Shown: piece by piece, positions 22,233-44,232 of the stretch
Position numbering within the stretch: the stretch's first letter is position 1
How the letters are laid out: the number at the start of each line of letters is the position of its first letter
Source of the DNA: Amphiscolops sp. MND2022
Lineage: Eukaryota
Direction of reading: 5' to 3'
DNA length: 64,000 nt
Assembly (NCBI GenBank): GCA_964187785.1
Contig: OZ076421.1
Location: 21,080,001 to 21,144,000 of the forward strand
Translations under genes and position numbers: made by a program
The notes under the pieces: generated by a model
The model's input: only the letters and a program-made list of their open reading frames with translations
Told to the model about the DNA's origin: nothing
The model's database searches: none

Positions 22233-22238
22233 TTTATT
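22233..22238 (-). terminator. Putative polyadenylation signal AATAAA of the mucin gene
   Basis: AATAAA on the minus strand about 120 nt after the TGA at 22358-22360. Confidence 0.5.
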
Positions 22239-22357: not shown

Positions 22358-22503
22358 TCAGGCGGGACAAACGTTCAATCCAAAAGCGAGAACATTGTCC
22401 TCGTCGATACAGCGATTGCATTGACAGTCAGTCACCTTTCCGATCTGTACCGTGTGAACGCCATCTTCACAGATTAGATCAACGTCTTGGGATACAACAA
22501 TAC
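22358..22503 (-). CDS. Mucin-like gene, last exon (end of cystine knot)
   Basis: Acceptor TTTCGCAG. Phase 1 gives GIVVSQDVDLICEDGVHTVQIGKVTDCQCNRCIDEDNVLAFGLNVCPA* with the CxCxxC of a CTCK domain. Confidence 0.88.
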
Positions 22504-23066
22504 CTGCGAAACATGGGAGGGAAAAATTACCATCTTTGAATTTTATGCTTCCAAAATCTACTGTATTTCACAACTTTTCGCTAGAAGAAGTATAAAAAAG
22601 TTTATTTCCCGGTTCAAATCCAAGGTATTCGAGTTCTGCTTATCAAAATAGGATTCGGTTAAAATACGAGCATAATGTGATGATTTTTACTTTTAAAAAA
22701 GTGAAAAGCGATACATACAGACACTATCAAAACTAATTATAATTAGTGCCAATATTGATTCATATCAGAGCAGTTAATTTTCTAAAATGCGTCGGATTTT
22801 TTTAAAACGGGTTTTCGCCTCGTCTTGTGTTGACCATGTAACAACACATCGCTTTTATTTCGTTCTATAGTTGTATATCAAAAGTTTGCACACACCTAGT
22901 ATTCTATAGGTTTCTCGAATTTTTAAGTTGAAATTATTCATAAATTTATAACACTGTAGGAACAGCGGACTACGCTGGTAATTTAATCTTGAGTATTTCC
23001 ATCAAACTCCCATTTAGCATCTAGAAAAGTTTGACCTTATTCTTTTAGGTCAACTGTACGACGTAC

Positions 23067-23210
23067 CTGTACAACACTCGCACTTGCGGTGCAGTTTCAT
23101 AGTCAGTCCGTCGAACTCAGCCAGAGTATGAGGCAGCTCGTCGGTGGCCTGGATAGAATCCGGACACGCTCCGGTACATTTGCCAATGTCCACCGTCTGA
23201 TTGAGACATT
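23067..23210 (-). CDS. Mucin-like gene exon (CTCK core)
   Basis: TTGCAG acceptor and GTACGT donor, phase 1-1: KCLNQTVDIGKCTGACPDSIQ...KCECCT (CxGxC and CxCC motifs). Confidence 0.88.
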
Positions 23211-24256
23211 CTGCAACAATCAAAATTTACTAATATCAACGTCAACTTGAAAAAATAATAGAATTGTTCATAGAATAAACAAGTGAACTTTTTGTGGGAT
23301 AACAACTTCGGAAGTTTTCTTCACTGTAGTGCGTCAAAATGTTTTTGTCGGATTCGAAATTCCATTTTAGGATTTCCAGAGGTTGATGGTTGTTCACACA
23401 TTCTTAGCATAAAGCATTTATTATTATTCCATTTGCACTTGTATCATTTTCAAATCGATCTTTATTGAGAAATGTTCTTCATCGAACAACTACTACCATG
23501 GACTTGTAAAAAAAGCAAAAAAGTATCAACCGCTCATACTTGGTTACAACCTGCTTCTAGTCATGGCTTTCCATACATGATTCAATCATGATTGTTGGAT
23601 TCGTCGTGCCTAAAATTATTCCAAGGACATGGAAAGGTATCCATAACTCATGGATGATAACGGCTAAAGGACCATGATGAAATATATGATCGAACATGAT
23701 CTCATGAATTCAATTTGACGTTATGAAATAATTAGCATCTGAAGACACGATTAAAAGAGCCCTTTCATTTGTGGCATTTGGGATCCTCCTAAACACCAGT
23801 AGAAAAACTTCCGTGAAATTGAGGAACTGCATTTATTGGTCCAAAGTTTAACAGTAAAAAGAACTGGGGACGCATTTATGAATGAATGGAATTCACAACC
23901 TTTTGAGTCAAATTATCTCATGCCATTGAAACAAAAAACAAAGACGATTTAATCCGTAAACAACAACAACAACTGTTTTCTCCATTGACGAACCCTTAGG
24001 TACTGAGCGGTCAATATAAATTATGAGAACTATGACTATATGTCTCTGACGACAACATCAAATTTTATTGTGCATCAAAATGGTTCAACTTTGAAAAAGC
24101 TTTTGTTTTTAAATATTCGTACCACCTCAGGACCTTGGGAATCACGTTTTGAAACTGCTTTTTTCTTGTTTCTGTATTGTATGGATTCTAATTGCTTTAT
24201 CTATGATCTATTTAGTGCAAATTGAAAAGAAGCATTTTGCTGCTGTTACAAGTTTC

Positions 24257-24613
24257 AACAAGAATGGACCGGCTCAAGTCGGAGCCATATCTAAGGCTCA
24301 AAAAAGACTTCAAAATGTCAAAGTTTGGTGAATTGGGGACCCTTTTATGAAAAAAAATTGAAAAAAGTCTCACAGTGCCGAAAAACTCAAAGATAGGACC
24401 CTTTAGTCTCGCCCGGTTTTGTATGTTACGCGGAAAAAAAGGAAAAACCTTTTTGATTCTGTTCACTAGGCCAAATGGTTCAATTTGACATCATAAAATT
24501 TTGTAGAACTTGTAGAAATATTTTGGTCATTTCAGGTGTATCGAAAAAAAAGTAGAAAACACTGACGAAAAGCCATGGCTATAGTCGACTTAAGAAAAGC
24601 GCCCACTAAAAAA
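24257..24613 (-). mobile_element. HINE-like element copy (in mucin intron)
   Basis: Reverse-oriented AACAAG...AAGTCGGAGCCATATCTAAGGCTC at one end and AAAAGCGCCCACTAAAAA at the other, with the same internal blocks as 11831-12361. Confidence 0.6.
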
Positions 24614-25623
24614 TGACTTATCTATTTCAGCAAAAAAAAACGAAAACGAAGAAATAATTTTTTGAAAATCACAGAGCAAGAAACAGTCAGATAAAACAAT
24701 AATTTTTTAGAAAAGTGTTTTCTTCAGCAAGAAGTTTCACAGTGTCGAAAAGGAGCTCAAAGGTCGCCAAACGTTTTGCAAGGCGAAAACATTCATGAAC
24801 TAAAAGGAAGTTTTGACCCTTTGACCAAGTGAAAATATTTTTGTAGAAAAGTCACACAGTGCCAAAAAACAGTAGGTATTTCCTACTAAAATTGATAAAC
24901 AAACTCTCATCAATTCAACAGAATCAAAAACAATTGAACAGGCCACCCTTAAGACTCGGAAAAGGGTTGTCCTTTACAGAAAACGTGAAAAAACCAAACA
25001 ATGTGAAGAAAATTTTTCTCGAAAGTTTATCAAAAGTCTTTTTTTTTCAATTCTTATGTTGGTCGCTTTGTGCCGGAAAATTTGAGGTGGCTCTCTATGT
25101 CCGCAAAATGCTTTGTTTCTGCTAAACATCAAAGTGTTATTTCGGTTTGAACAGAAATCTCATAGTGCCGGAAAACCCAAAGGAGGGACGCTTTTGTCTC
25201 TTCCTCTGCTTCTGCAAGCACGAAAAATATTCAAATCAAAATCTAAGTACAATAAAATATCGAAAAAACAGCTGTTCTGTTTAGATGAAAAAAAGAGAAA
25301 AAGTTTTTTAAGCAAGCTCTTACAATACCGAAAAAAACCCAAAATTGAGAACCTTTGGCTTCAAAATGAGTAATTCGAAGTACTATAAAAAAGCAAAAGA
25401 TACCCTTTTGTAAACTTGAAGTTTTCTCCAAGAAACTTTATATCCGGTATACGTTATATCCGGGATACATTATATCTTGTATGCGTTAAATCCGGTATGG
25501 GTTGCGTTATCGTAAAAGAAGAACTATTTAGCACTTTTAACAGTTCAAATGTAGATGGCCAGAAGGGACTTTGCCAAAATTAAAGAACTTTTGTAAAACT
25601 ATTTTGGTTGATTCAAGTGTATA

Positions 25624-26210
25624 AACAAGACGGGAACGTCCCAAGTTGGCGCCATATCTTAGGCTCAAAAATATTCAAGGAACAACTATTGGAAAAATTT
25701 GGAAAAATTTTTTTTAAAAAAAAAATTTTGATTTTTTTTCGAAAAAAAGTATTTTTTAGGTCGCACAATGCCGAAAAACTCAAAAAGAGGCCATTCAGGC
25801 TCATTCAACGTTTTCTACAAACCGAAAACTTCAAAAAAATTCAAGGGGGTACCCTTTGATAAATTTCGAAAATTTTCGAAAAAAGTCGCATAGTGCCGAA
25901 AAAAACCCAAAGGGGGGACCCTTTGGTCTCACCTGTACTTTTGGAAGCATTAAAAAATTTATGGTTTAGTGCGAGAATCGAACCCACGCTCTCCGGCTGG
26001 GTCGAAGATGGAAGATGAACAAATATGAAAGATGGACAAAAATTGTAAGAAAAGTGGACCACTCAGAGTGAGATTGTCAACTGAAAAAAACAAAAAAAAA
26101 CTACTCACTGTAAGAGTCGGGCTTTTTTCCTTAAGGGAAAATACGCCGACTAAAAATTGACTTAACACCATGACTATAGTCGATTCATGTCTAAAGAAAA
26201 GCGCCGACTA
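25624..26210 (-). mobile_element. HINE-like element copy (in mucin intron)
   Basis: AACAAGACGGGAACGTCCCAAGTTGGCGCC ... GAAAAGCGCCGACTA, with an internal B-box-like segment. Confidence 0.65.
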
Positions 26211-26296
26211 CAAACAATGATACCATGGCTTCAATGATCATTATCAAACAAGACGACTAAAAACAATGATATCATGGCTTCGATGATCATGAATAA

Positions 26297-26430
26297 AAAA
26301 CGCCCGCTAAGCACCGGGATATTTTCCGCCTTCTCAAAAAGTCAGGAAAAGGCCAGCTTCCAACTAACTTTCTTCTGCCGGATAGGCGGATGCACTACCA
26401 ACTGAGCCATAGTAACTAAAATAGCGACTA
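26297..26430 (-). mobile_element. tRNA-derived SINE-like fragment
   Basis: The reverse complement has A-box-like TATGGCTCAGTTGGTAGTGC and shares the GCGGAAAATATCC..TGCTTAGCGGGCGT tail with 27280-27401. Confidence 0.45.
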
Positions 26431-27279
26431 ACTGAAGTGGATGGAACTAGTGGACATTTGTCAGAATTTAGAAAAGAAACGCAACACAGATGATGATATT
26501 CTTTCCCCACATACAAATAAAAGTGTGGGGCGGAAAGTAAACATGCCTTGCAAGTTCTCGGTCGGAAATTCACAATGCCATAAATTTAGTAGTGATATAC
26601 TGCGATTGTGTAGTTTTCAAGATTGAACTTTTGAATTATTTTTTATATTCCAAAAAACCTCACAACATGCCCAAAAAAGTCAAAAGTAAATAATTAGGTG
26701 CTCTGCATATATGGCAGAGTATTCAAATGTTTCGTGGGTATGAATAGCTAAAGAGCTCTGCGACAAAATTATCTGCTTAGCATTCTTTTTGTGAGAGAAT
26801 TTTGAACTTTTCTTATATCCCAAAATGCACAAAAAAGCAAAAAATTTCAAACAGTTTTCGCAATTTTGTGAATATTTTGAATAATTTTGTTGGTATGAAT
26901 GTCCAGAGTCTAACGACAAAATTGTCTACCCAATATACGATTAACATAAAAGTTTGATTTCGAAAGTTGTTTGCATTAAAATGATTTTTTGGATACTTTA
27001 CAGAGACAGCTGGCTTTTAAAAGAAAAGTGCCTAGAAACCCAAAAAGTGTCGAAATTTTTAAATTTTGTGAATTGTCTGTGCAAGATGTGTACGCTCGAG
27101 TCCTAAAAGCATCGCCCGGCCCTCAAATTATCATATCGGAAAAAAATGTTCCGGTACTAAGCAGGCGTCTTGTTATTTTCCGCGCACATATAATGGTGGG
27201 GGGAGGAAATTCATAATCTGTGTTGCGATTTTTCCAAATTCTGCAAATCTCCACTTTATCACTCCATTTAGTAAATTCT

Positions 27280-27401
27280 AGTCACCATGGCGAGGGTTGG
27301 TAGTGCGTCTCCCTGACAGACACGAGGTCGTGGGTTCGAACCCCTGCTAATGCGTTACATTTTTAGCGGAAAATATCCCTATGCTTAGCGGGCGTCTTGT
27401 T
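27280..27401 (+). mobile_element. tRNA-derived SINE-like element
   Basis: A-box-like TGGCGAGGGTTGG and B-box GGTTCGAACCC, no complete cloverleaf, tail GCTTAGCGGGCGTCTTGTT. Confidence 0.55.
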
Positions 27402-28198
27402 ACCATTAACTTATGTTTTCGGAATTGTAACCATTAACTTATGTTTTTGGAATTGTCAGAAAGCGCAGTAACAAAATTGGGAACTGCAAAAAATAGGCGA
27501 TAAGAAGATAGGTGACAGGTACTATAGCCGTAACTTCGCAACTGACCAAGAATAAATGAAAGTCAATGCATGCAACTTCTTCTATTCTACCATTTGGTTA
27601 TATTATCGAGCGTCTAAAGTCACGGCTTCCTATATGTTTTACATATTTCACAAAACGAAAACAGTTTTTCACATAAAAAACCATAATTTTTACGGTACTT
27701 TTAAACATAGTATGGCTTCTTCAGTCGAAGTCATCGTTCAATCTTGCCAAATATGATATGGCAGTTTTGTGAGAATCATGTTGAGTCACTACAGGATCGA
27801 AGCAGTAATTAAAATATTCCCTGATATAGTCACGATTGACTACATTTGTCGTTTATTAACGTTGCTCGGAATATTATTTAAATAACACGTTTTTTCATTT
27901 ACCCAACAGTTTGGACCAAAAAATTCATTTAGCAAGCGACAATGTCTCAAATCGCGGCCCCGCTATTGGTTCAAAAAGGCCTAGTTGTAATTGCAATTCC
28001 GTGATTACGTTCATATACAGGAAAACAAAACTAATTTGTATGCTCGAGTAAAAAATTATTTGGGTTCGGATATAGTCAATTGTTCGTTGCGAGTTGTCCA
28101 TACATGTTTCGGAACGGAAAGGAAGAAACAAAAAAGTAGCAGTACCACTGCGCCTCTTGATGAGCTCTAAAAATGGGCTCTTTAGTAGTAGTACTAAC

Positions 28199-28364
28199 TG
28201 TCCACGCTGACTGTGACCAAGTTCTCTTGCGTGGAGCAAGGACTCGGCAGACATTTGCCACAGCAGTTGTTGTCCATGGCGTCTGTCAGGTTGGAGGGTG
28301 GGTAATATGTCATTCCCACTGAACAGTCCTCCTGGCTCGATGGCCCGTCAACACACTTCATTTC
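28199..28364 (-). CDS. Mucin-like gene exon (VWC-like end / CTCK start)
   Basis: CTGTAG acceptor and GTTAGT donor, phase 0-1: EMKCVDGPSSQEDCSVG...NNCCGKCLPSPCSTQENLVTVSVD. Confidence 0.88.
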
Positions 28365-29020
28365 CTACAGGTCAAAAGTTCAAAAAGGGGTCAGCCGTAG
28401 ATGATAAAGTATTGTTCTAAATATTCTATGGCTTATCTTCTTGAGCTTTTTACGCATATTTTTATGATATTGGCTTTCCTTCTACTAAACTGATAGCTGT
28501 TGAAGCTCTCGAAGGTCAGTGATTTCTTTTGAAAACAATATTTGTTGTCGGAAAAAAAAGGAATTTTTAGGTCTTGCTTTTGAAGTAGACATAAAAATCA
28601 AAAATGATCTTCATTATATCATTGTATTTCACACGAAGTTTCTATCAAGAAGTTACTAGAGATTATTATTTTAATCGCCCATTCGGAGTTGCATATGGCT
28701 TATCTCATTTTTTTATTTTGAAACACATTTTGGAGAACGCATTTTGAAAACTACAATTTTAAGCATTACACCTGCAAGAATGTTGTACAATTTTTATAAA
28801 ATAGAATTTTTTCCAAATACATAGAAAAATGTTTCGATAGAATATTTCAAACTTCGAGAATGGGAGCAGCGTTCAAAATTTGCAGAACAAATAACAGATA
28901 CTTGTCTGGGGTCTATATCAACCCCCATTAGCTTTAATAGTAAGTGAGACTTTATTTGTTATTTTCCGTCGCCACAAATTTATTTGTGTATGGGTGAAGA
29001 AAATCATGATCTGTGTTGGG

Positions 29021-29332
29021 TTTTTAGTCGGCGCTTTTCGCAGAAAAACGCAGACTATAAAAGTGACTTTTCTTTTTTTTCTATTTTTTCAAGACCAACG
29101 TAGTGACAGATTTTATATGCTTTATAAGCTGGCTTCCACTAACTGCCACACTAATGTAACTTCTTCTGCTTCTAATTTTTTGCGGATTTTTTGAGGTCTG
29201 CCAAGCAGAATGGATGTTCAAAAAAATTCCAAAGGGTCCCCTTTTACATTTTTCGGCACTATGCGACTTACCAGAGACTTGCTATTTTTGAGCTTTGGAT
29301 ATGGCGTCGACTTGGGCCGTTCCCGGCTTGTT
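29021..29332 (+). mobile_element. HINE-like element copy (in mucin intron)
   Basis: TTTTTAGTCGGCGCTTTTCGCAGAAAAACGCAGACTATA ... GGCGTCGACTTGGGCCGTTCCCGGCTTGTT. Confidence 0.68.
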
Positions 29333-29815
29333 TTTTTTCAACTTTTGCCATATTTCCACTTTTTACTCCACTTTATATTTAATATTGCGTTTTACTAAGG
29401 AGGAGGCGGAGGTTTGAAAACAAGAGCTCTCATTTGTCCCAGCACGCTATATCCGAACTTTTGACGTTATATCCGAAGTAAATTGGGTATTACTAAAGAA
29501 GAAGCGGAGGTCCGAAAATATTGCGCTTTATCCTAATTTTGACGATACATCCGAAGTCAATAACGTTTTACCGATGAGGAGGTAAGTTTTCGATTAAACG
29601 TGTATTGTTAGCCAATTGAAGGCGGAAAATATCTCAATGCATATCAGGCGTCTTGATGATGGTTAATTTAGATTTTCCAAGATGCAGGGAAGTTTTACAA
29701 CATTTTCCATGCAGTGCCCTTGATTTTTCTAGGTTTTATCAAAAATTTGCCTGCATTTCATTCATGTGCATACAAAATTTCACGGCATTCTCAACTATTT
29801 TTCAACAATTAATAC

Positions 29816-30020
29816 CTTGTGGATATTATCATTGGCACAGATGTAGTTGTAGCACTCGTCCTCGTACACGATGTCGTTCTCCTTGTAGGTGAACACGTGA
29901 CCAGTGGAGTTGGTGTACAGACACGCCTTACAACTGGTGGTGTTGTGGAAACACTCCTCTTGTTCCTTCTCCCCTCCGTCGCAGGGGGCTCCTCCGTAGG
30001 TCGCATGACGCACGATACAC
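29816..30020 (-). CDS. Mucin-like gene exon (second TSP1 C-half plus VWC-like start)
   Basis: CTGCAG acceptor and GTATTA donor, phase 2-0: RCIVRHATYGGAPCDGGEKEQEEC...CLYTNSTG...ECYNYICAND. Confidence 0.88.
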
Positions 30021-30519
30021 CTGCAGGTACAAAAAACTACTTGCTGAAAACACCAGCCCTGAGAAGAACGCTTATATTCCCAAAGTCCGATTAGTTCTGC
30101 TTTTCTAAGCAAGTTCCCTTGACGAAACTGCCGGGATTTTTTACATGTTGCAGGAATGCGCGCAGGGTAATTTTTTATGTAACATCGAAAATTCAGACTG
30201 CGCGCAGGAAAAAACCTATTTTGCGCAGCTTAAAAAATCCTGGCAGCATTTCACTGCGCGTTGAGAAAAGTCGTTACAACTTACAAAATTTTTGAAAAAA
30301 GTCTCTGAAGCGCAAGCGTAAAAAAACGTTAAAAACTCAATGGCAACATTGTTCTTGGGTAGAAATACTGATTAATTGTGTTACCATTTTTGCAGCCAAG
30401 TGGTGGTCAAGCAGTGGTCGGATTGAAGCCGTGGTTGCAAACTGGCTTGAATTGCTAAAGGCCACAAAGGTCTGACTTCATCGTGTTATTTTTATTAGAA
30501 CGAGGGACCCTTGCTCGGG

Positions 30520-30600
30520 GCCCAACAATGGCGACTTGAGAGAGATTCGAACCTGATACCGCCAAGGCCGAACGCTCAAACAACTACACCAAGCTCCCCA
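30520..30600 (-). mobile_element. tRNA-derived SINE-like head
   Basis: The minus strand has TGGTGTAGTTG (A-box-like) and GGTTCGAATC (B-box) but no full cloverleaf. Confidence 0.4.
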
Positions 30601-31016
30601 CAGACTATGCCCCTCACGGAAAATGCTTCAATTTTGTTATACCCTACTTCAAATGACTTTCGAATTGTGGAGAACAGTACTTCTTTATTGGTGACTTGAT
30701 ATGGGATTGATATTAGAATTGAATGCCTTGAAAGATCTAACCTACTTAGAACATGTATGCGGCAGTAGCACAAAACGTCAAGCAGAGTTTCAGAGTTCTG
30801 ACAAACAAAAATTTGCCCTGTGATCATGGCAGTCATTCTGAACGAATTTTTGTCTCTATTTCTCTCGAAGTTCTATTCACTGCCAAGTTGGAACGTCCAT
30901 AAATTGATGGAGGAAGTCAAAATGACTGTCAAAAAGACAGTCAAAGTGACGATGATGTAGTCAGCATCCGGCAGTCAGTACAAAAATGACGAGACGTCCC
31001 AATGCGGAAAACGAAC

Positions 31017-31130
31017 CTTTCTCGTTCTCGAATGCAGTCGGAGTTGCAGTTCGTCCAATCAGACCACTCGGTCGCCACGCAATCTTCAGGACAACCTCCT
31101 CGGCAGTTGAGTTTTCCGTTAACACACGAA
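31017..31130 (-). CDS. Mucin-like gene exon (TILa/VWC-like end plus second TSP1 N-half)
   Basis: TTTTAG acceptor and GTTCGT donor, phase 2-2: CSCVNGKLNCRGGCPEDCVATEWSDWTNCNSDCIRERE (WSxW motif). Confidence 0.88.
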
Positions 31131-31533
31131 CTAAAAATCATCATCATAAAATTTAAAAAGTTACATAAACTGCTCATTAACATTGCAACGTTTGCTACTT
31201 TTTTCAACAAGTCCATGTGATTTTTACCACTTTTTTGGCTCTCCGTTCATTTATTCTAAAATTTTTCAAAAAATGAAATTTCAATTACATATTTCGAAAA
31301 AAATCTCTAATAAAATCCCGACTTTTTCTATCATGAAAACAGTTTATTGGCATGTGTTTTATGAATAAAATTGAAACATTTTTACATGAAAACTACTCAT
31401 TCGTTACACATTCATTCACTGTAGTTCTTTGAATAAGTTCTTTAAATAATTGTATAATCTTTGAACTGAAAATAAAATTTGGAAAAAATTTCAAAAATTG
31501 GGATTTCATTTTTAGGTATAATGAAAAACACAC

Positions 31534-31668
31534 CAGGTCCTTCCAGGGCAGCAAGTTTCCTGGTCCTTCCCGGACACGTAAGAATCGCACTCCGGATCAT
31601 AACACTGGCATTCTTCCGGATCCACACATTGGCGCGTGATCTCATCGAACACCATGGGAGACTCACAT
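31534..31668 (-). CDS. Mucin-like gene exon (TIL C-half)
   Basis: TTCCAG acceptor and GTGTGT donor, phase 2-2: RCESPMVFDEITRQCVDPEECQCYDPEC...TCCPGRT. Confidence 0.87.
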
Positions 31669-32171
31669 CTGGAACGAATTGAAACATTGAACTCCAAAAT
31701 TCGAAACTGAATTTGATTAGAAATGAAAAATTCGATTATAAACAACTCGGAAGAAAGCAACAAAAATCCGGTCTCGTCGGTTTTCTAAATCTATTTCAAT
31801 CCCGTCGAAGTGACCCAAAAAAAGTTGAAGACCAAACAATAAACTTTAAATTCAAGGTGGTGAAAATGTTTAACAGGTCGCTCTTGAATTGAAAGCTTTA
31901 TGACACCCAATGGTCTCTCGCAATTTTTGAGCAGTTTTTTGTGATTTTTTTGGAGACTTTTCCAATTTCACCAAAGAGTGCCCTTTTGTTTTTGAATAAC
32001 TTCAGTTAAAAAACAGGCTTTTATGCTCAGAGTGTCCTCCCTTTGAAAATTTTTGACGTCTTGAGATTTTTGAGTTTTTTTAAAGAAAGAGTTTTTAAAT
32101 GTTTTGAGGTGTTTTGCGCCTTTTCAGTTTTAATCGCGGCTTGTTGAATGAAAAACTCAATTCAGTTTTAC

Positions 32172-32322
32172 CTGCACGAGTGGCCGTAGATCTCGTCGTT
32201 GTCCAAGTCGTCTCCTTTGCCAGATAGTTTGTCGTCGGGGTTGCATCTGAAGTCGCGGCCCAATGAAGAACAAGTTTGCTTGCAGTACTTCGTCGTGTTT
32301 TGTCTCGTCATGTCGCCAATAC
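32172..32322 (-). CDS. Mucin-like gene exon (TIL N-half)
   Basis: TTGAAG acceptor and GTAAAA donor, phase 1-2: CIGDMTRQNTTKYCKQTCSSLGRDFRC...GHSC. Confidence 0.82.
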
Positions 32323-32866
32323 CTTCAACCAATCAAAGGGTAATGCCGAAGAAAGAATTATTTGTTTTCAATTTACCACATACATGGAACTTACTGAAAT
32401 TACTTTTAATCAAAACTCGTTTTTTGAAAAAAAAATTAAAAAAAACTTTTCTGTTGAAATGACCAGAAATAGCACAACGTGGCACAAAAATGGACATAAT
32501 TTCCGCTGATTACTGAAGAAGAACAAAACCAAAGGTCACAGTTGTTCTGGCTCCTACTTTGGAGTCAAGACCGAGTTTGAATATCCTCTTGTATGAAATT
32601 TTCGAACAAAATGGTTTCCTGAAATGCAGTTTTTCAAAGACTTCGATTCTTCCACGACAGTTTGTTTGCATGCATCCTTCAAAACTAGTCAGCATTAATT
32701 GAAAGAAATAAAGAAATGTCGTAATTAGGAAAATTATGACATCAAAATAGTGAAAAGTGTGAAATCTAAAAATCGACACGCCTTGAATTATTGCTTGCAT
32801 GTCTGAAGTTCACAAAAGTATCGCAACTGAGGTAAAAGCTTCTGGGTGACGTCATTGTTTACTAAC

Positions 32867-33052
32867 AAGGATCGGTTGTGGCGTTGGTGCACAGTTGTTC
32901 ATCTTGGTTGCACACCCTGCTCTGGGATCCGGCGCCTCTACACAGCTCTACTTTCTGTACAATAAGGAAACACTCTCGTTCGCGGGTCTGCGTACCGATG
33001 GCACCGCATCCTGCCACGTCACACGAAGACCATTCGCCCCAGGAACCCCATT
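32867..33052 (-). CDS. Mucin-like gene exon (first TSP1 repeat)
   Basis: TTCCTCAG acceptor and GTTAGT donor, phase 1-1: EWGSWGEWSSCDVAGCGAIGTQTRERECF...CRGAGSQSRVC. Confidence 0.92.
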
Positions 33053-33344
33053 CTGAGGAACACAAAGAAAATATACTTTATACGTATACATCCGAGATGA
33101 CGTCATATTTTCAAGTTATGGATGTTCAAGGTATCTGAGTCTATATCTCCATGTTTATGAACTTCGAAAACATCAAATTTCTTGACGAGCAAAATACGAA
33201 GTAAGCTGTTCGCATTTTCATTGAAATGATACCTGGACTTCAAAAAAAGTTAAATTTAACTTTCTAGGACTCTCAGGATATTATTTTTTAAAACGATTCA
33301 GGTCAAATGTGAGGCTGTAAGAAGTGGTTTTCATTGGTACGAAC

Positions 33345-36300
33345 CCTCGCGATTGTAGGTATCATTCCAAGATTGACAGTACTTCTTGGTTGTTGTACGG
33401 GTGGTGCGTGAGGTTGTTGTCGTACTGCGCGTGAAAGATGTAGTAGCTGAAGTGACTGGTGAAGTAGTTGAGGAAGTTGTGGAAGATGTCGTGCTGCTAG
33501 TTGTTGAGGAAGTGGTTGGTGAAGACGTACTGCTTGTAGTAGATGACGTGGTGCTGCTAGTCGTGGGTGAGCTGGTGCTGCTCGTTGTCGATGATGTTGT
33601 GCTGCTTGTTGTTGAGCTTGTCGTTGAAGAAGTTGTGCTGCTTGTTGTCGGCGATGAAGTGCTGCTAGTTGTCGAAGAAGTTGTGGGTGATGATGTACTG
33701 CTTGTTGTGGATGAAGTTGTGCTGCTCGTAGTCGGGTGGGATGTAGTGGAAGACGTCGGGTGACTAGTTGTTGAGCTAGTTGTGGAAGATGTTGTTGGTG
33801 AAGAAGTACTGCTGGTTGTTGATGATGTGGTACTGCTTGTTGTTGATGATGTGGTACTGCTTGTGGTGGGTGAGGATGTGCTACTTGTTGTCGAACTAGT
33901 AGTAGAGGAAGTTGTAGGTGAAGAGGTACTGCTGGTCGTAGATGAAGTTGTACTGCTCGTTGTGGGTGAGCTAGTGCTGCTTGTTGTTGATGAGGTGGTG
34001 CTGCTTGTCGTTGAAGAAGATGTGCTGCTAGTTGTTGACGAGGTTGTGGATGAAGTTGTGCTACTTGTTGTGGGAGATGAAGTGCTACTAGTAGTAGATG
34101 ACGTGGTGCTGCTAGTCGTGGGTGAGGATGTGGATGATGTTGTGCTACTCGTTGTCGGCGACGAAGTGCTGCTTGTGGTTGAACTTGTTGTTGAAGAAGT
34201 AGTTGAAGAAGTTGTGCTGCTTGTTGTCGGTGACGAAGTGCTGCTAGTTGTCGAAGAAGTTGTGGGTGATGATGTACTGCTGGTTGTAGACGAAGTTGTG
34301 CTGCTTGTCGTTGGAGATGAAGTGCTGCTTGTAGTAGATGACGTGGTGCTGCTAGTCGTGGGTGAGGATGTAGATGATGTCGTGCTACTCGTTGTTGGCG
34401 ACGACGTGCTGCTTGTGGTTGAGCTTGTCGTTGAAGAAGTAGTTGAAGAAGTTGTTGAAGAAGTTGTCGGTGATGATGTGCTGCTTGTTGTAGACGAAGT
34501 TGTGCTGCTTGTTGTGGGCGATGAAGTGCTGCTAGTGGTCGAAGAAGTTGTCGGTGACGATGTACTGCTTGTTGTGGATGAAGTTGTGCTGCTCGTAGTC
34601 GGGTGAGATGTGGTGGAAGACGTCGGGTGACTAGTTGTTGAGCTAGTTGTGGAGGACGTTGTTGGCGAAGACGTACTGCTTGTTGTCGATGATGTGGTAC
34701 TGCTTGTTGTTGATGATGTGGTACTACTTGATGTCGATGACGTGGTACTGCTTGTGGTGGGTGAGGAAGTGCTACTTGTTGTCGAACTAGTAGTAGAGGA
34801 CGTTGTAGGTGAAGAGGTACTGCTGGTCGTAGATGATGTTGTACTGCTCGTTGTGGGTGAGCTAGTGCTGCTTGTTGTTGATGACGTGGTGCTACTTGTC
34901 GTTGGGGAAGATGTGCTGCTTGTTGTTGAGCTAGTTGTTGACGAGCTTGTGGATGAAGATGTGCTACTTGTTGTGGGAGATGAAGTGCTACTTGTAGTAG
35001 ATGAAGTGGTGCTGCTTGTCGTTGGAGAGGATGTGGATGAAGTTGTACTACTTGTTGTGGGAGATGAAGTGCTGCTTGTAGTAGATGATGTAGTGCTGCT
35101 AGTCGTGGGTGACGATGTGGATGAAGTTGTGCTACTCGTTGTCGGTGAAGAGGTGCTGCTTGTTGTTGAGCTTGTCGTTGAAGAAGTAGTGCTGCTTGTT
35201 GTGGGCGATGAAGTGCTGCTAGTGGTTGAAGATGTTGTAGGTGATGATGTGCTGCTTGTTGTAGACGACGTTGTGCTGCTTGTTGTGGGAGATGAAGTGC
35301 TGCTTGTAGTAGATGACGTGGTGCTGCTAGTCGTAGGTGAGGATGTGGATGATGTTGTGCTGCTCGTTGTCGGCGATGAAGTGCTGCTGGTGGTCGAAGA
35401 AGTAGTCGGTGATGATGTACTGCTTGTTGTGGATGACGTTGTGCTGCTCGTAGTTGGGTGAGATGTGGTGGAAGACGTCGGGTGACTAGTTGTTGAGCTA
35501 GTTGTGGAGGACGTTGTTGGCGAAGACGTACTGCTTGTTGTCGATGATGTGGTACTGCTTGTTGTCGATGATGTGGTACTACTTGTTGTCGATGATGTGG
35601 TGCTGCTTGTTGTCGAGGATGTGGTAGTGCTTGTGGTGGGTGAGGATGTGCTACTTGTTGTCGAACTAGTAGTCGAGGAGGTTGTAGGTGAAGAGGTACT
35701 GCTTGTCGTAGATGATGTTGTACTGCTCGTTGTGGGTGAGCTAGTGCTGCTTGTTGTGGATGACGTGGTGCTGCTGGTCGTTGGAGAAGATGTGCTGCTA
35801 GTAGTGGAAGATGTTGTGGGCGAAGATGTACTGCTAGTTGTTGAGCTTGTTGTTGAAGATGTTGTGAATGAAGTTGTGCTACTCGTTGTGGGAGATGAAG
35901 TGCTGCTTGTAGTAGATGATGTAGTGCTGCTAGTCGTGGGTGACGATGTGGATGACGTTGTGCTACTCGTTGTTGGCGACGAGGTGCTGCTTGTTGTTGA
36001 GCTTGTCGTTGAAGAAGTAATTGAAGAAGTTGTGCTGCTTGTTGTGGGCGATGAAGTGCTGCTAGTGGTTGAAGAAGTTGTGGGTGATGATGTGCTGCTT
36101 GTTGTAGAAGAGGATGTGCTACTTGTTGTTGGTGATGAAGTGCTGCTTGTAGTTGATGACGTGGTGCTGCTAGTCGTGGGTGAGGATGTGGAAGATGTTG
36201 TGCTACTCGTTGTTGGAGACGAAGTGCTGCTGGTGGTCGAAGAAGTTGTCGGTGATGATGTACTGCTGGTTGTAGACGAAGTTGTGCTACTTGTTGTTGG

Positions 36301-39300
36301 AGATGAAGTGCTGCTTGTAGTTGATGAGGTGGTGCTGCTAGTTGTAGGTGAGGATGTGGATGATGTTGTGCTGCTAGTTGTCGGCGATGAAGTGCTGCTG
36401 GTGGTCGAAGAAGTTGTCGGTGAAGATGTACTGCTTGTTGTCGATGAAGTTGTACTGCTCGTAGTTGGGTGAGATGTGGTGGAAGAAGTCGGGTGACTAG
36501 TTGTTGAGCTAGTTGTGGAAGATGTTGTTGGTGAAGAAGTACTGCTTGTTGTCGATGATGTGGTACTGCTGGTTGTTGACGACGTGGTACTGCTTGTTGT
36601 CGATGATGTGGTACTGCTTGTGGTTGGTGAAGACGTACTACTTGTTGTCGAACTAGTGGTAGAGGAAGTTGTAGGTGAAGAAGTACTACTGGTCGTAGAT
36701 GATGTTGTACTGCTCGTTGTGGGTGAACTAGTGCTGCTTGTGGTTGATGACGTGGTGCTGCTTGTCGTGGGTGACGATGTTGATGAAGTTGTGCTGCTGG
36801 TTGTTGGAGAAGATGTGCTGCTAGTTGTTGAGCTAGTTGTTAACGAGGTTGTGGACGAAGTTGTGCTGCTTGTTGTGGGAGATGAAGTGCTACTTGTAGT
36901 AGATGACGTGGTGCTGCTTGTCGTTGGTGAGGATGTTGATGAAGTTGTACTACTCGTTGTCGGCGACGAAGTGCTGCTTGTTGTTGAGCTTGTCGTTGAA
37001 GAAGTTGTTGAAGAAGTTGTGCTACTTGTTGTAGGCGATGAAGTGCTGCTAGTGGTCGAAGAAGTTGTTGGTGATGATGTACTGCTTGTTGTCGATGAAG
37101 TTGTGCTGCTGGTAGTAGGGTGAGATGTGGTGGAAGAAGTCGGATGACTAGTTGTTGAGCTAGTTGTGGAAGATGTTGTTGGTGAAAAAGTACTGCTTGT
37201 TGTCGATGAGGTGGTACTGCTCGTTGTCGACGATGTGGTACTGCTCGTTGTCGAGGACGTGGTACTGCTGGTGGTTGGTGAAGACGTGCTACTTGTTGTC
37301 GAACTAGTGGTAGAGGAAGTTGTAGGTGAAGAAGTACTACTTGTGGTAGATGATGTTGTACTGCTCGTTGTGGGTGAACTAGTGCTGCTTGTCGTAGGTG
37401 ACGATGTTGATGAAGTTGTGCTGCTGGTTGTTGGAGAAGATGTGCTGCTAGTTGTTGAGCTAGTTGTTGACGAGGTTGTGGATGAAGTTGTGCTACTTGT
37501 TGTCGGCGATGAAGTACTGCTTGTTGTTGAGCTTGTCGTTGAAGAAGTTGTGCTGCTCGTAGTGGGCGATGAAGTGCTGCTAGTGGTTGAAGAAGTTGTG
37601 GGTGAAGATGTACTACTTGTTGTAGACGAAGTTGTGCTGCTTGTCGTTGGTGATGACGTGCTGCTTGTAGTAGATGACGTGGTGCTGCTAGTTGTGGGTG
37701 AGGATGTGGATGAAGTTGTGCTACTCGTTGTCGGCGACGAAGTGCTGCTTGTTGTTGAGCTTGTCGTTGAAGAAGTCGTGCTGCTTGTTGTGGGCGATGA
37801 AGTGCTGCTAGTGGTTGAAGACGTTGTAGGTGATGACGTACTGCTTGTTGTAGACGACGTTGTGCTGCTCGTAGTAGGGTGAGATGTGGTGGAAGACGTC
37901 GGGTGACTAGTTGTTGAGCTAGTTGTGGAAGATGTTGTTGGCGAAGAAGTACTGCTTGTTGTCGATGAGGTGGTACTGCTCGTTGTCGACGATGTGGTAC
38001 TGCTCGTTGTCGAGGACGTGGTACTGCTTGTGGTGGGTGAGGAAGTGCTACTTGTTGTCGAACTAGTAGTAGAGGACGTTGTAGGTGAAGAGGTACTGCT
38101 CGTCGTAGATGATGTTGTACTGCTCGTTGTGGGTGAGCTAGTGCTGCTTGTTGTTGATGAGGTGGTGCTGCTTGTCGTTGGAGAAGATGTGCTGCTAGTT
38201 GTTGACGAGGTTGTGGATGAAGTTGTGCTACTTGTTGTGGGAGATGAAGTGCTACTTGTAGTGGATGACGTGGTGCTGCTTGTCGTTGGTGATGATGTGG
38301 ATGAAGTTGTGCTACTTGTTGTTGGCGACGAAGTGCTGCTTGTTGTTGAGCTGGTAGTTGAAGAAGTAGTTGAAGAAGTTGTGCTGCTCGTAGTGGGCGA
38401 TGAAGTGCTGCTAGTGGTTGAAGAAGTTGTGGGTGAAGATGTACTACTTGTTGTAGACGAAGTTGTGCTGCTTGTCGTTGGTGATGACGTGCTGCTTGTA
38501 GTAGATGACGTGGTGCTGCTAGTTGTGGGTGAGGATGTGGATGAAGTTGTGCTACTCGTTGTCGGCGACGAAGTGCTGCTTGTTGTTGAGCTTGTCGTTG
38601 AAGAAGTTGTGCTGCTTGTTGTTGGTGATGAAGTGCTACTAGTGGTCGAAGAAGTAGTCGGTGATGAAGTACTGCTTGTCGTGGATGATGTTGTGCTGCT
38701 CGTAGTCGGGTGAGATGTGGTGGAAGACGTCGGGTGACTAGTTGTTGAGCTAGTTGTGGGGGACGTTGTTGGCGAAGACGTACTGCTTGTTGTCGATGAT
38801 GTGGTACTGCTTGTTGTTGATGATGTGGTACTGCTTGATGTCGATGACGTGGTACTGCTTGTGGTGGGTGAGGAAGTGCTACTTGTTGTCGAACTAGTAG
38901 TAGAGGACGTTGTAGGTGAAGAGGTACTGCTGGTCGTAGATGATGTTGTACTGCTCGTTGTGGGTGAGCTAGTGCTGCTTGTTGTTGATGACGTGGTGCT
39001 GCTTGTCGTTGGAGAAGATGTGCTGCTAGTTGTTGACGAAGTTGTTGATGATGTTGTGCTACTAGTTGTGGGAGATGAAGTGCTACTTGTAGAAGAGGAC
39101 GTGGTGCTGCTGGTCGTTGGCGAGGATGTGGATGAAGTTGTGCTACTCGTTGTCGGCGACGAAGTGCTGCTTGTGGTTGAAGAAGTTGTGCTGCTTGTTG
39201 TTGGTGATGAAGTGCTACTAGTGGTCGAAGAAGTAGTCGGTGATGATGTACTGCTTGTTGTGGATGAGGTTGTGCTGCTCGTTGTCGGATGAGATGTTGT

Positions 39301-40639
39301 GGAAGACGTCGGGTGACTAGTTGTTGAGCTAGTTGTGGAGGACGTTGTTGGCGAAGAAGTACTGCTCGTTGTCGATGATGTGGTACTGCTTGTTGTCGAT
39401 GACGTGGTACTGCTTGTTGTCGACGATGTGGTACTGCTTGTGGTTGGTGAAGACGTAATACTCGTTGTGGAACTAGTAGTAGAGGATGTTGTAGGTGAAG
39501 ATGTACTGCTGGTAGTAGATGATGTCGTACTGCTTGTTGTGGGTGAGCTAGTGCTACTTGTTGTGGATGAAGTTGTGCTACTCGTTGTTGGGGATGAGGT
39601 GCTGCTAGTAGTGGAGGATGTCGTGGGTGAAGATGTACTGCTAGTTGTAGACGAAGTTGTGCTGCTTGTAGTTGGGTGAGATGTGGTGGAAGAAGTCGGG
39701 TGACTAGTTGTTGAGCTAGTTGTGGAAGATGTTGTTGGTGAAGAAGTACTGCTGGTTGTTGATGATGTGGTACTGCTTGTTGTTGATGATGTGGTACTGC
39801 TTGTTGTTGATGAAGTTGTGCTGCTGGTAGTTGAAGAAGTTGTACTGCTCGTGGTAGATGATGTGGTACTGCTTGTCGTTGGGGAGGAAGTGCTGCTTGT
39901 TGTTGATGACGTCGTGCTACTTGTAGTCGGCGAAGATGTACTGCTGGTTGTTGATGAAGTAGTGCTACTGGTGGTGGGTGATGAAGTACTGCTCGTAGTG
40001 GGCGATGAAGTACTGCTGGTAGTTGATGAAGTAGTGCTACTGGTGGTGTGTGATGAAGTACTGCTCGTAGTGGGCGATGAAGTGCTGCTTGTGGTTGATG
40101 AAGTGGTAGGGCTTGTGGGGTGCGATGTTGTTGATGAAGTTGGGTGACTGGTTGTCGAACTTGTGGTAGAAGATGTTGTTGGGGAACTTGTGCTACTGGT
40201 TGTGCTACTTGTAGTGGGAGAAGAGGTGCTGCTAGTTGTGGACGAAGTAGTGCTGCTTGTTGTTGACGATGTGGTACTGCTTGTTGTGGGTGATGAAGTC
40301 GAAGAAGTTGTACTACTTGTCGTTGGAGAAGATGTACTGCTCGTTGTCGAGCTTGTTGTTGAAGATGTTGTGGATGAAGTCGTGCTACTTGTTGTCGGAG
40401 ATGAAGTGCTGCTAGTAGTTGAGGATGTGGTTGGTGATGATGTACTGCTAGTTGTTGATGAAGTAGTACTACTCGTAGTGGATGAAGTTGTGCTGCTTGT
40501 AGTCGGTGAGCTGGTGCTACTTGTCGTGGAGGATGTTGTGCTACTTGTTGTGGGTGACGACGTCGATGAAGTTGTACTACTTGTTGTCGGACTCGAGGTG
40601 GATGATGTTGTTGGCGACGAGGTGCTGCTAGTTGTTGAA
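33345..40639 (-). CDS. Giant Thr/Ser/Pro (PTS) mucin exon, about 2431 codons (not in ORF track)
   Basis: Acceptor TTTTTTTCAG at 40640. The frame STTSSTSSPTTSS... is stop-free to ...TTRTTTKKYCQSWNDTYNRE with a phase-1 GTTCGT donor at 33344, which matches the phase-1 TSP1 exon. The 7295 bp keep frame. The exact donor is inferred. Confidence 0.9.
33400..40639. repeat. Coding hierarchical tandem repeat (12/21/27-bp motifs in about 10 higher-order units)
   Basis: TTSS, TTSSTSS and PTTSSTTSS motifs. Units are delimited by a paired SHPT marker at spacings of 867, 855, 1011, 651, 759, 831, 579, 387 and 441 bp. Confidence 0.92.
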
Positions 40640-41012
40640 CTGAAAAAAATGGTAGTAATACGTGATCATACCTCCCGTCTATTAATTGTGGTTTTTTGAG
40701 AGTTTTTCTCCCGTATAATAAATGATCCACTTTTTTAACATTTTCATATTTGCTTCTTAGCTCTTCGACCGAAGTTAACAAAAAGTCAAAGTAAGGCTTT
40801 TGTGGGTAGATTATGGAGCGATGTCTTTCGTTGCAAGAAATGGGCGTTGAATGGATTAAATTTTCAGTGGACATAGCATCATTGCCTATCAATGCCAAAA
40901 ACAGTTTCACTGCTGCCATTAATGTCCGGGAACAAGATGAAAACGTGTGGTCTGTCCTCAAAAAGTTTACGTTCAAAAAAAACTCATTTTTCTTCCTTCG
41001 TGGACGTCTTCC

Positions 41013-41021
41013 AGAGAGACG

Positions 41022-41078
<57 letters not shown>

Positions 41079-41086
41079 AGAGAGAT
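41013..41086. repeat. (GA)n microsatellite
   Basis: About 35 AG dinucleotides with a few interruptions. Confidence 0.98.
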
Positions 41087-41228
41087 AGGGTCTCAGTGTT
41101 AACTTCCTTCTCTGCTCAAAATTACAAGGTATGTAATATTATCGTGCCTTACTGTGGGACTTTCTGAATTGGTCAGCAATGAATCATGACACCAGACAAA
41201 ACTCCATGATAACTCAGACAAAAATTTA

Positions 41229-44111: not shown

Positions 44112-44232
44112 TTCATCACGACCTATAATTTATCTCTAATCAATCTTGGAAATTTTTAGTGACATTTTTTTAGTTTTCAACAGACACCATTTTATTCATT
44201 CCTTTAAGTGACCTTTCTGCATGTTTGAAAAC

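What the first reader, a model, noticed from the sequence alone, without database searches (positions are those of the whole stretch)
22358..40639. Giant mucin with an SCO-spondin-type C-terminus (TSP1-TIL-TILa/VWC-TSP1-VWC-CTCK)
Nine exons join with consistent phases into at least ~2850 aa: about 2430 aa of PTS followed by about 415 Cys-rich residues. Classical gel-forming mucins end in VWD/VWC/CTCK and lack TSP1, whereas TSP1-TIL-TSP1-VWC-CTCK is the SCO-spondin tail. A huge O-glycosylatable rod fused to this tail, with no VWD exon found nearby, suggests a distinct polymer-forming mucus, adhesive or fibre protein that dimerises through the cystine knot. Glycosylated repeats with TSP1/TIL modules also occur in invertebrate adhesive proteins. 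Domain calls are from Cys/Trp patterns by eye.
Basis: partly seen in the sequence, partly recalled or inferred. Interest (0 to 1): 0.8.

Follow-up and report, generated by a model that had tools for sequence, protein, structure and literature searches.

The report
Giant mucin with SCO-spondin-like tail
This animal gene encodes a very long sugar-coatable serine/threonine rod that ends in the same string of small cysteine-rich modules as SCO-spondin, and it appears to be a copy, without the usual polymerising head, of a mucin family that links ordinary mucus proteins to SCO-spondin.

Summary
On the minus strand, nine exons (40639 to 22358) all have GT-AG borders and matching phases. They give 2846 codons: 2417 residues that are 93% Ser/Thr, then a 429-residue tail with 50 Cys. 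Three intron-less contigs from other samples and one compact genomic contig from a relative carry the same tail in the same order. 48 of the 49 tail Cys that were compared are conserved.

Domain support is uneven:
- TSP1 x2: shown by Pfam.
- TIL: Pfam-significant in the paralogue, 87% by profile comparison for this lineage.
- VWC: below the Pfam threshold.
- CTCK: profile match to Norrin at E 1e-4, plus fold matches.

Whole-tail fold matches favour SCO-spondin C-termini (E 1e-12) over mucin tails (1e-8).

New here: a paralogue on contig C1 has the same tail and more than 6400 residues of the same repeat. Three VWD hits with C8, TIL and LDLRA exons lie upstream of it on the same strand, which would make it a SCO-spondin-like gel-forming mucin. 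The window copy has no VWD anywhere on its chromosome and no Cys-rich exon within 100 kb upstream. Its first exon is still missing, and no RNA data exist for this organism.

Lang et al. 2016 already reported that invertebrate mucins resemble SCO-spondin. I call this a new variant of a known kind, of moderate interest.

The parts
33345..40639 (-). Single 7295-nt PTS exon: 2417 residues of (SSTT/SSPT)n, 93% Ser+Thr and 6% Pro, with about ten higher-order units marked by a TSHPTSSTTSHPT motif. It begins in phase 2 after a polypyrimidine tract and AG. It ends in ...KKYCQSWNDTYNRE, in phase 1.
32867..33052 (-). Exon 2: complete first TSP1 repeat (WxxWxxW...C...R.R.C).
   Evidence: Pfam TSP_1 at E 2.1e-6, 28.3 bits, above the 21.6 cut-off; splice borders
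32172..32322 (-). Exon 3: first half of an 8-Cys TIL-like module, with an acidic insert.
   Evidence: hhalign of the family's region against Pfam-verified TILs gives 86.7%; the homologous paralogue exon is Pfam TIL at 3.7e-8
31534..31668 (-). Exon 4: second half of the TIL-like module and the start of a TILa/E-like Cys module.
31017..31130 (-). Exon 5: end of the TILa-like module and first half of the second TSP1 repeat (EWSDWTNC...).
   Evidence: Pfam TSP1_spondin at 0.004 on the exon; the full domain in the orthologue matches TSP_1 in two stretches; 71% identity to the paralogue
29816..30020 (-). Exon 6: second half of TSP1-2 and first half of VWC.
   Evidence: same exon borders in the relative's genomic contig L013
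28199..28364 (-). Exon 7: second half of VWC (..CCGKC..).
   Evidence: Pfam VWC over the whole profile in the orthologues at E 4.6e-5 and 2.1e-4, below the cut-off
23067..23210 (-). Exon 8: first half of the C-terminal cystine knot (CxGxC ... CxCC).
22358..22503 (-). Exon 9: second half of the cystine knot (C..G...CxCxxC), an extra lineage-specific Cys, and the stop TGA at 22358-22360.
22233..22238 (-). AATAAA polyadenylation signal, 119 nt after the stop.
40876..40919 (-). Weak candidate for the missing first exon (ATG, MAAVKLFLALIGNDA, phase-2 end). The donor GTCCAC is poor. Listed as unresolved, not as a finding.

Best explanation
This is an intact gene for a secreted mucin-type glycoprotein. 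It belongs to a small, conserved animal family built as a huge Ser/Thr rod followed by TSP1 - TIL - TILa-like - TSP1 - VWC - C-terminal cystine knot. That tail is the last part of SCO-spondin.

Shown:
- the nine-exon structure
- conservation of the tail and of 48 of the 49 Cys compared (from the first TSP1 repeat onward) across five sequences
- the two TSP1 repeats
- the kinship of the tail with SCO-spondin and mucin C-termini
- a paralogue with the same tail and repeat that has three VWD hits plus C8, TIL and LDLRA exons upstream on the same strand

Inferred from what is known of VWF, mucins and Norrin:
- The rod is densely O-glycosylated and extended, roughly 0.6 micrometre.
- Two chains are joined tail to tail by disulfides through the cystine knot. 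The Cys positions aligned with Norrin's CxCC and terminal CxCxxC are all present.
- The TSP1, VWC and TIL modules offer binding sites for matrix or glycans.

No VWD, C8 or other Cys-rich exon lies upstream, so the window copy most likely makes dimers rather than long polymers. It is a head-less derivative of a SCO-spondin-like gel-forming mucin, used in mucus or in an adhesive or lubricating secretion.
For: - Gene model with GT-AG borders and consistent phases; AATAAA after the stop.
- Intron-less contigs L012, L014 and L015 carry S/T-rich sequence running straight into the same tail. They are 47-50% identical to the window tail and have no indels at any junction.
- Genomic contig L013 of a closer relative holds all tail exons in order within 2 kb.
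- 48 of 49 Cys are conserved, the paralogue included.
- Pfam TSP_1 is above the cut-off. TIL: 3.7e-8 in the paralogue exon and hhalign 86.7% for the window lineage. VWC: 4.6e-5 and 2.1e-4. The CTCK profile matches Norrin at E 1.2e-4 with all ten Cys aligned.
- Foldseek matches Norrin, the VWF CTCK (4nt5) and PRDC.
- Foldseek against Swiss-Prot models finds the C-termini of MUC19, pig apomucin, FIM-B.1, otogelin-like, MUC5B, VWF and CCN.
- Foldseek against AFDB clusters: the entries named SCO-spondin or SCO-spondin-like (best E 3.4e-12), together with unnamed and TSP1- or CTCK-named entries (E 1e-14 to 1e-11), rank ahead of mucin tails at 1e-8.
- Paralogue anatomy.
- No VWD hit on contig C13. 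No Cys-rich or S/T-rich exon in 100 kb upstream.
- Codon-diverse repeats: units 72-77% identical as DNA, with all Ser and Thr codons used. This argues for selection on the protein.
Against: - The start codon and signal peptide were not found, so secretion is assumed, not shown.
- No RNA run exists for this organism, and no annotated protein of this gene is in the protein collection. Expression of this copy is therefore untested.
- The structure model is poor (mean pLDDT 57.7), so the fold matches carry limited weight.
- VWC and CTCK stay below Pfam's curated cut-offs. TILa has no tool support.
- That the paralogue's VWD and LDLRA exons and its PTS and tail are one transcript is inferred only from strand, order and spacing.
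- Small N-terminal exons, or a head encoded more than 100 kb away, would have been missed.
Confidence: 0.62

Rival explanations
1. The window gene is a full gel-forming, SCO-spondin-like mucin like its paralogue. Its VWD-C8-TIL and LDLRA head is encoded further upstream than I could look, or on an unplaced or misjoined piece of the assembly.
For: The paralogue on C1 has such exons upstream. The intron before the window's PTS exon is full of retroelements and could be very long. A second VWD-C8-TIL cluster on C12, at 31.45-31.47 Mb, has no matching tail of this family. An N run lies about 3 kb beyond the window end.
Against: The six-frame Pfam VWD scan of the whole genome gives no hit on contig C13. 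There is no Cys-rich exon in 100 kb upstream on either strand. The C12 cluster is on another chromosome.
Confidence: 0.15
2. It is a 5'-truncated partial duplicate that is not expressed, or expressed only as a non-functional transcript: a well-preserved pseudogene.
For: No start codon or signal-peptide exon was found. There is no RNA evidence. The upstream region is a retroelement graveyard.
Against: The 2846-codon frame is intact across eight introns. 48 of 49 Cys are kept, although the tail is only 38% identical to the paralogue, so the copy is old. Contigs from other samples, three intron-less (L012, L014, L015) and one genomic (L013), are closer to this copy than to the paralogue. The lineage is therefore conserved, and the intron-less ones suggest it is transcribed elsewhere. 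The repeats are kept as Ser/Thr despite 23-28% DNA divergence.
Confidence: 0.12
3. It is the organism's SCO-spondin orthologue proper, a Reissner-fibre-type protein of the nervous system, and not a mucin.
For: The tail is collinear with SCO-spondin C-terminal fragments. The paralogue has VWD plus LDLRA, the combination that Lang et al. 2016 use to define SCO-spondin.
Against: SCO-spondin has 27 TSR, 13 LDLrA, 12 TIL and 7 VWC domains and no mucin domain (PMC8487547). Here there are two TSR, one TIL and one VWC behind 2417 residues of Ser/Thr, with no LDLRA or VWD in the window gene.
Confidence: 0.04
4. Same protein, different use: it is a component of a temporary bio-adhesive or a fibre, as in limpet pedal mucus and flatworm adhesive organs, rather than of barrier mucus.
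For: Limpet pedal mucus contains a SCO-spondin-like VWD/C8/TIL/LDLRA protein and a separate TSP1 x4 + cystine-knot protein (PMC7333891). An AFDB entry named only 'TSP1_spondin domain-containing protein' (A0A1I8HB97; organism hidden by the tool, and from memory of the accession a flatworm protein) is among the best tail matches.
Against: There is no tissue or proteomic data for this organism. The rod is almost pure Ser/Thr and lacks the charged or aromatic repeats typical of adhesive proteins.
Confidence: 0.25

Closest known systems
SCO-spondin (SSPO), C-terminal region
   Same: The TSR, TIL, VWC and CTCK modules are in the same order. Entries named SCO-spondin or SCO-spondin-like are among the best whole-tail matches in the AlphaFold cluster library (E 3.4e-12, query residues 12-399). 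The paralogue also carries VWD x3 plus LDLRA, the SCO-spondin signature.
   Different: SCO-spondin has about 27 TSR, 13 LDLrA, 12 TIL, 7 VWC, EMI and FA5/8C domains and no mucin domain. The window protein has two TSR, one TIL-like module and one VWC behind a 2417-residue Ser/Thr rod. No VWD, LDLRA or EMI exon was found.
Invertebrate gel-forming mucins that group with SCO-spondin (Lang, Klasson et al. 2016, PMC4948705)
   Same: These are PTS-bearing proteins of invertebrates whose VWD-based tree places them next to SCO-spondin. The C1 paralogue fits this description (VWD x3, C8, TIL, PTS, cystine knot).
   Different: That paper defines the group by three or more VWD domains and does not mention TSP1. 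The window copy has no detectable VWD, and its defining feature is the TSP1-containing tail.
Vertebrate gel-forming mucin and VWF C-termini (MUC19, PSM, FIM-B.1, MUC5B, MUC2, VWF, otogelin)
   Same: PTS followed by VWC and CTCK. Foldseek matches at E 1e-8 to 1e-5 over the VWC-CTCK part. The cystine-knot dimerisation logic is shared.
   Different: These have no TSP1 repeats and carry N-terminal VWD-C8-TIL assemblies that drive polymerisation.
Limpet pedal-mucus proteins P-vulgata_3 and P-vulgata_6 (Kang et al. 2020, PMC7333891)
   Same: One protein has VWD x3, C8, TIL and LDLRA x5. A second has TSP1 x4 plus a C-terminal cystine knot. Both are SCO-spondin-like, both are in mucus, and in situ hybridisation places P-vulgata_3 in the pedal sole. 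Together they mirror the head and tail of the C1 paralogue.
   Different: No giant PTS domain was reported between them. The domain counts differ.
CCN family (IGFBP-VWC-TSP1-CTCK) and Norrin
   Same: They share the VWC, TSP1 and CTCK modules. The CTCK profile matches Norrin at E 1.2e-4 with all ten Cys aligned.
   Different: These are small signalling proteins with a different module order and no mucin domain.

Membership tests
Mucin (PTS domain protein) | A long Pro/Thr/Ser-rich tandem-repeat domain in one or a few large exons | tested here: met
   2417 residues, S 49%, T 44%, P 6%, in a single 7295-nt exon. Pro is lower than in classical mucins.
Gel-forming mucin | N-terminal VWD-C8-TIL assemblies (three or more VWD) | tested here: not met
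   No Pfam VWD hit on contig C13 in a whole-genome six-frame scan. No Cys-rich exon in 100 kb upstream. The C1 paralogue does have three VWD hits plus C8 and TIL.
Gel-forming mucin | C-terminal cystine knot (CTCK) | tested here: met
   Family profile against Norrin at E 1.2e-4 over the whole domain, with 10 Cys aligned. Foldseek matches to Norrin, VWF CTCK 4nt5 and PRDC at probability 0.96-1.0. Pfam Cys_knot reaches only 0.0068, below the cut-off.
SCO-spondin | LDL-receptor class A repeats together with VWD x3 | tested here: not met
   None in the window gene or in 100 kb upstream. Present upstream of the paralogue (Ldl_recept_a 3.8e-9, VWD 3.2e-9).
SCO-spondin | Long arrays of TSR alternating with TIL (SCOR) and VWC | tested here: not met
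   Only two TSR, one TIL-like module and one VWC. A PTS rod stands in place of the array.
SCO-spondin | C-terminal TSR-TIL-TSR-VWC-CTCK segment | tested here: met
   The whole tail aligns to entries named SCO-spondin or SCO-spondin-like (best E 3.4e-12), ahead of mucin tails. The caveat is that the model's mean pLDDT is 57.7.
TSP1 repeat (PF00090) | Match to the Pfam model above the gathering score | tested here: met
   Exon 2: 28.3 bits against a cut-off of 21.6. The orthologue has two stretches, 36.6 bits. PDB matches to BAI1, UNC5 and properdin TSRs for the second repeat.
TIL (PF01826) | Ten-Cys trypsin-inhibitor-like module | tested here: inconclusive
   The window lineage has eight Cys and no Pfam hit. 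The homologous paralogue exon has ten Cys and matches TIL at 3.7e-8, 33.8 bits. hhalign of the window lineage against verified TILs gives 86.7%, E 4.4e-6.
VWC (PF00093) | Match to the Pfam model above the gathering score (27.6 bits) | tested here: inconclusive
   Full-length profile matches in two orthologues at 24.1 and 22.0 bits. This is the best-modelled part of the structure (pLDDT 70-84). Fold matches to mucin, kielin/chordin and CCN VWC regions.
TILa / VWF E module (PF12714) | Match to the Pfam model | tested here: not met
   No hit at E up to 10. The call rests on the Cys spacing seen by eye.
CCN family | IGFBP - VWC - TSP1 - CTCK in that order, about 350-380 aa | tested here: not met
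   The order here is TSP1-TIL-TSP1-VWC-CTCK behind a PTS rod, with no IGFBP module.

The most novel reading that the evidence does not exclude
The family is a living intermediate between gel-forming mucins and SCO-spondin. One paralogue would be VWD x3 / LDLRA head + more than 6400 residues of PTS + SCO-spondin tail. The window gene is a head-less copy that can only dimerise through its cystine knot. It could therefore act as a dimer-only lubricant, or as a chain terminator that caps polymers of the full-length paralogue and sets the mesh size of the secretion.
Probability: 0.2. Interest if true: 0.6.

Novelty: new variant of a known kind. Interest (0 to 1): 0.42.

Why it matters
Giant mucin genes are usually broken or missing in assemblies and annotations. 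Here a complete 7.3-kb repeat exon and its tail can be read, and relatives from other samples confirm the splicing.

The pair of paralogues bears on how SCO-spondin, the protein of Reissner's fibre, relates to mucus mucins. One copy would combine the SCO-spondin head (VWD plus LDLRA) and tail (TSR-TIL-TSR-VWC-CTCK) with a mucin rod where vertebrate SCO-spondin has its TSR array. The other copy keeps only the rod and the tail.

If the head-less copy is expressed, it offers a natural test of what a cystine-knot-only mucin does in a secretion. It would also supply a marker gene for mucous or adhesive gland cells in this animal group.

Tried and rejected
- **RNA evidence.** The look-up of sequencing runs found only four DNA-type runs of one study and no RNA run.
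- **First exon.** Scans of 40640-54000 for Cys-rich or S/T-rich frames and for ATG + hydrophobic stretch + phase-2 donor gave nothing convincing. The ATG at 40919 is a weak candidate only.
- **Upstream homology with the paralogue.** An 84%-identical 546-bp match at 62909-63454 turned out to be a repeat with more than 5000 candidate copies, not intron homology.
- **Annotated protein of this gene.** A region search with the end of the PTS exon found none.
- **Pfam on single window exons.** It sees only TSP1, because introns split the other modules. Orthologue contigs and paralogue exons served as proxies.
- **PDB searches.** phmmer and profile searches of the whole tail found only TSRs.
- **Representative-protein search with exon 6.** Only two real relatives turned up at E below 1e-10, plus one weaker exon-sized relative (P0004). 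The HYR protein P0003 and the repeat protein P0005 are chance or Cys-pattern hits.
- **Complex prediction on two copies of the orthologue's cystine knot.** No verdict (score 0.01, fold pLDDT 43-44). This is neither support nor evidence against dimerisation.
- **C3 locus at 66.46-66.56 Mb.** This is possibly another VWD mucin. Only L006 and L007 were read.
- **Sample identifiers.** The sample and run identifiers of the relatives were not found in the paper library. The organism stays unidentified.
- **Trans-splicing.** I rejected a trans-spliced leader as the way to start the protein, because the PTS exon contains no Met.

Full report
**What is there**

The window is eukaryotic DNA rich in retroelements. 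Between 33334 and 40665 the minus strand holds a 2444-codon open frame made almost entirely of Ser and Thr. Strand-asymmetric composition marks the same stretch, and it contains many imperfect 12- to 387-nt tandem periods. Downstream on the same strand lie eight short Cys-rich frames.

Reading the borders base by base, I assembled nine exons by script: 40639-33345, 33052-32867, 32322-32172, 31668-31534, 31130-31017, 30020-29816, 28364-28199, 23210-23067 and 22503-22358.

- All eight introns are GT...AG and 292 to 4988 nt long.
- The phases join into one frame of 2846 codons ending in TGA.
- An AATAAA follows 119 nt after the stop.

The rod is 2417 residues (S 1176, T 1060, P 149). The tail is 429 residues with 50 Cys and seven N-x-S/T sites.

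**Is it a real coding unit?**

Four lines of evidence say yes.

1. The repeat uses all six Ser and all four Thr codons. Its higher-order units are only 72-77% identical as DNA, although they are nearly identical as protein. That is the pattern of an old array held by selection on the protein.
2. A search of 1.84 billion representative proteins with exon 6, followed by a word-index search with the first hit, led to three contigs from other samples: L012 and L015 (one JGI sample) and L014 (a Logan assembly). Each has a single open frame in which S/T-rich sequence runs straight into the same tail, with no intron. They align to the spliced window tail at 47-50% identity, with no indel at any of the eight junctions. 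The simplest reading is that they are transcripts of orthologues.
3. A 2056-bp metagenome contig, L013, carries all the tail exons in the same order on one strand with short introns. It shares the window lineage's acidic insert in the TIL-like module, so it is genomic DNA of a closer relative.
4. 48 of the 49 tail Cys counted from the first TSP1 repeat onward are conserved in all five sequences compared.

No RNA run exists for this organism, so expression of this very copy remains untested.

**What the tail modules are**

Pfam on single window exons sees only TSP1 (exon 2: 28.3 bits against a cut-off of 21.6), because introns cut the other modules. I used orthologue contigs and paralogue exons as proxies.

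| Module | Evidence | Standing |
|---|---|---|
| TSP1 x2 | TSP_1 matches two stretches; the second repeat matches the TSRs of BAI1, UNC5B and C8-beta in the PDB | Shown |
| TIL | The paralogue's homologous exon is a ten-Cys TIL at 3.7e-8, above the cut-off. The window lineage has lost one disulfide (eight Cys) and gets no Pfam hit, but a profile comparison with Pfam-verified TILs gives 86.7% | Shown in the paralogue, likely here |
| VWC | Matches over the whole Pfam profile in two orthologues at 24.1 and 22.0 bits, just under the cut-off; best-modelled part of the structure | Below threshold |
| CTCK | A profile of the last module matches Norrin at E 1.2e-4 with all ten Cys aligned, including CxGxC, CxCC and CxCxxC. 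Foldseek finds Norrin, the VWF CTCK domain (4nt5) and PRDC | Supported by profile and fold, not by Pfam |
| TILa | No tool support; Cys pattern seen by eye only | Unsupported |

From my own knowledge of Norrin and VWF, the first two Cys of CxCC and the last Cys of CxCxxC make the inter-chain disulfides. All of them are present here.

**SCO-spondin or mucin tail?**

An AlphaFold model of the orthologue tail is poor overall (pLDDT 57.7) but still gives significant, collinear Foldseek matches.

- In Swiss-Prot models the best matches are the C-termini of MUC19, pig apomucin, Xenopus FIM-B.1, otogelin-like, MUC5B, VWF, kielin/chordin and CCN proteins. Full SCO-spondin entries exceed 5000 residues, which as far as I recall is too long for AlphaFold DB. 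I did not check this, but it would explain their absence from that library.
- In the cluster library the best whole-tail matches include a fragment named SCO-spondin (E 3.4e-12, query residues 12-399), further SCO-spondin-like entries, and entries named by TSP1_spondin or CTCK domains or left unnamed (E 1e-14 to 1e-11). The tool hides their organisms; from memory of the accessions, several are invertebrate proteins. All of these rank ahead of the mucin tails (E 1e-8 and weaker).

**The paralogue changes the picture**

Searching the organism's own genome with tail exons finds one other locus, on contig C1. Features of that locus:

- All tail modules are there in order (28-71% identity per exon, 38% overall).
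- Three intron positions are conserved and three differ, so the duplication is old.
- Upstream of the tail lie three PTS exons of the same SSTT/SSPT type, totalling more than 6400 residues.
- Further upstream on the same strand lie exons that Pfam calls Ldl_recept_a, TIL, C8 and VWD, with three separate VWD hits.

If this is one gene, it is VWD x3-C8-TIL + LDLRA + PTS + TSR-TIL-TSR-VWC-CTCK. That would be a SCO-spondin head and tail around a mucin rod. The published descriptions agree:

- Lang et al. 2016 define SCO-spondin among VWD proteins by its LDLRA repeats. They report that invertebrate gel-forming mucins group with SCO-spondin (PMC4948705).
- The SCO-spondin review lists 3 VWD, 13 LDLrA, 12 TIL, 27 TSR, 7 VWC and one CTCK (PMC8487547).
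- Limpet pedal mucus contains a VWD/C8/TIL/LDLRA protein and a TSP1 x4 + cystine-knot protein, both SCO-spondin-like (PMC7333891).

The kind of protein is therefore known. What has not been described is the explicit TSR-bearing tail behind a giant PTS rod.

**The window copy lacks a head, as far as can be seen**

- The PTS exon starts in phase 2 and contains no Met, so an upstream exon must exist.
- No VWD hit lies anywhere on contig C13.
- The paralogue's TIL and C8 exons find homologues only on C12.
- The 100 kb upstream of the gene contain retroelement frames and a few unrelated frames, but no Cys-rich or S/T-rich exon.
- A scan for ATG + hydrophobic stretch + phase-2 donor gave only a weak candidate at 40919.

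The most likely reading is a short signal-peptide exon lost among the transposons of a long first intron, and a protein made of rod plus tail only. In that case the chains can be joined tail to tail but cannot be polymerised head to head. The attempt to test homodimerisation in silico gave no verdict.

**Verdict**

It is too strong on 'distinct' and 'polymer-forming'.

I rate this a new variant of a known kind: a SCO-spondin-related invertebrate mucin, here apparently without the VWD head. Interest is moderate. It would rise if cDNA shows that the head-less copy is expressed and that the C1 locus is a single SCO-spondin/mucin hybrid gene.

Noticed in passing
G000:C1:25448000-25541200 (loci L008-L010, L016-L018, L020-L023), minus strand: Paralogue with the same tail. 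It has three PTS exons (about 2200, 4049 and 162 codons) of the same SSTT/SSPT repeat. Upstream on the same strand are LDLRA, TIL, C8 and three VWD hits. This is possibly one giant SCO-spondin/mucin hybrid gene of more than 8000 residues.
   Followed up: partly
window 62909-63454: A 546-bp element with more than 5000 candidate copies in the genome, most of them 92-94% identical (one 99%). This is a young, abundant short repeat family. Two copies also lie in the paralogue's introns.
   Followed up: partly
window 4990-11290 (-), 12784-18423 (+), 48765-50321 (+), 54727-61147 (-): Large retroelement reading frames (gag/pol-like, integrase-like) flank the mucin gene and fill the region upstream of it. 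The copy at 48.8-50.3 kb is fragmented.
   Followed up: no
L006 and L007 (G000:C3:66465443-66478401); VWD hits at C3:66532362-66555154: Another mucin-like locus. TIL-like Cys modules alternate with Pro/Thr-rich repeats, and VWD exons lie upstream on the same strand. Further VWD clusters are at C12:31.447-31.467 Mb and C1:88.39-88.42 Mb.
   Followed up: no
window 41013-41085: A (CT)n/(AG)n microsatellite of about 36 units lies about 100 nt upstream of the weak candidate start codon at 40919.
   Followed up: no
window 22361-22375 (last codons of exon 9): The window protein has an extra, 11th Cys in the cystine-knot module (..NVCPA). It is absent from the three orthologue contigs and from the paralogue. 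An odd Cys could add an inter-chain bond.
   Followed up: partly
L011, about 3.0-3.3 kb beyond the window end (window-equivalent 67006-67255): An N run (200 N) in the upstream flank. It limits what can be said about that stretch.
   Followed up: no
window 32172-32322 and L013:265-552: The window lineage's TIL-like module has eight Cys and an acidic insert (..NPDD..GDDLDNDE..), which the closest relative (L013) shares. The paralogue keeps the canonical ten-Cys TIL in a single exon.
   Followed up: partly
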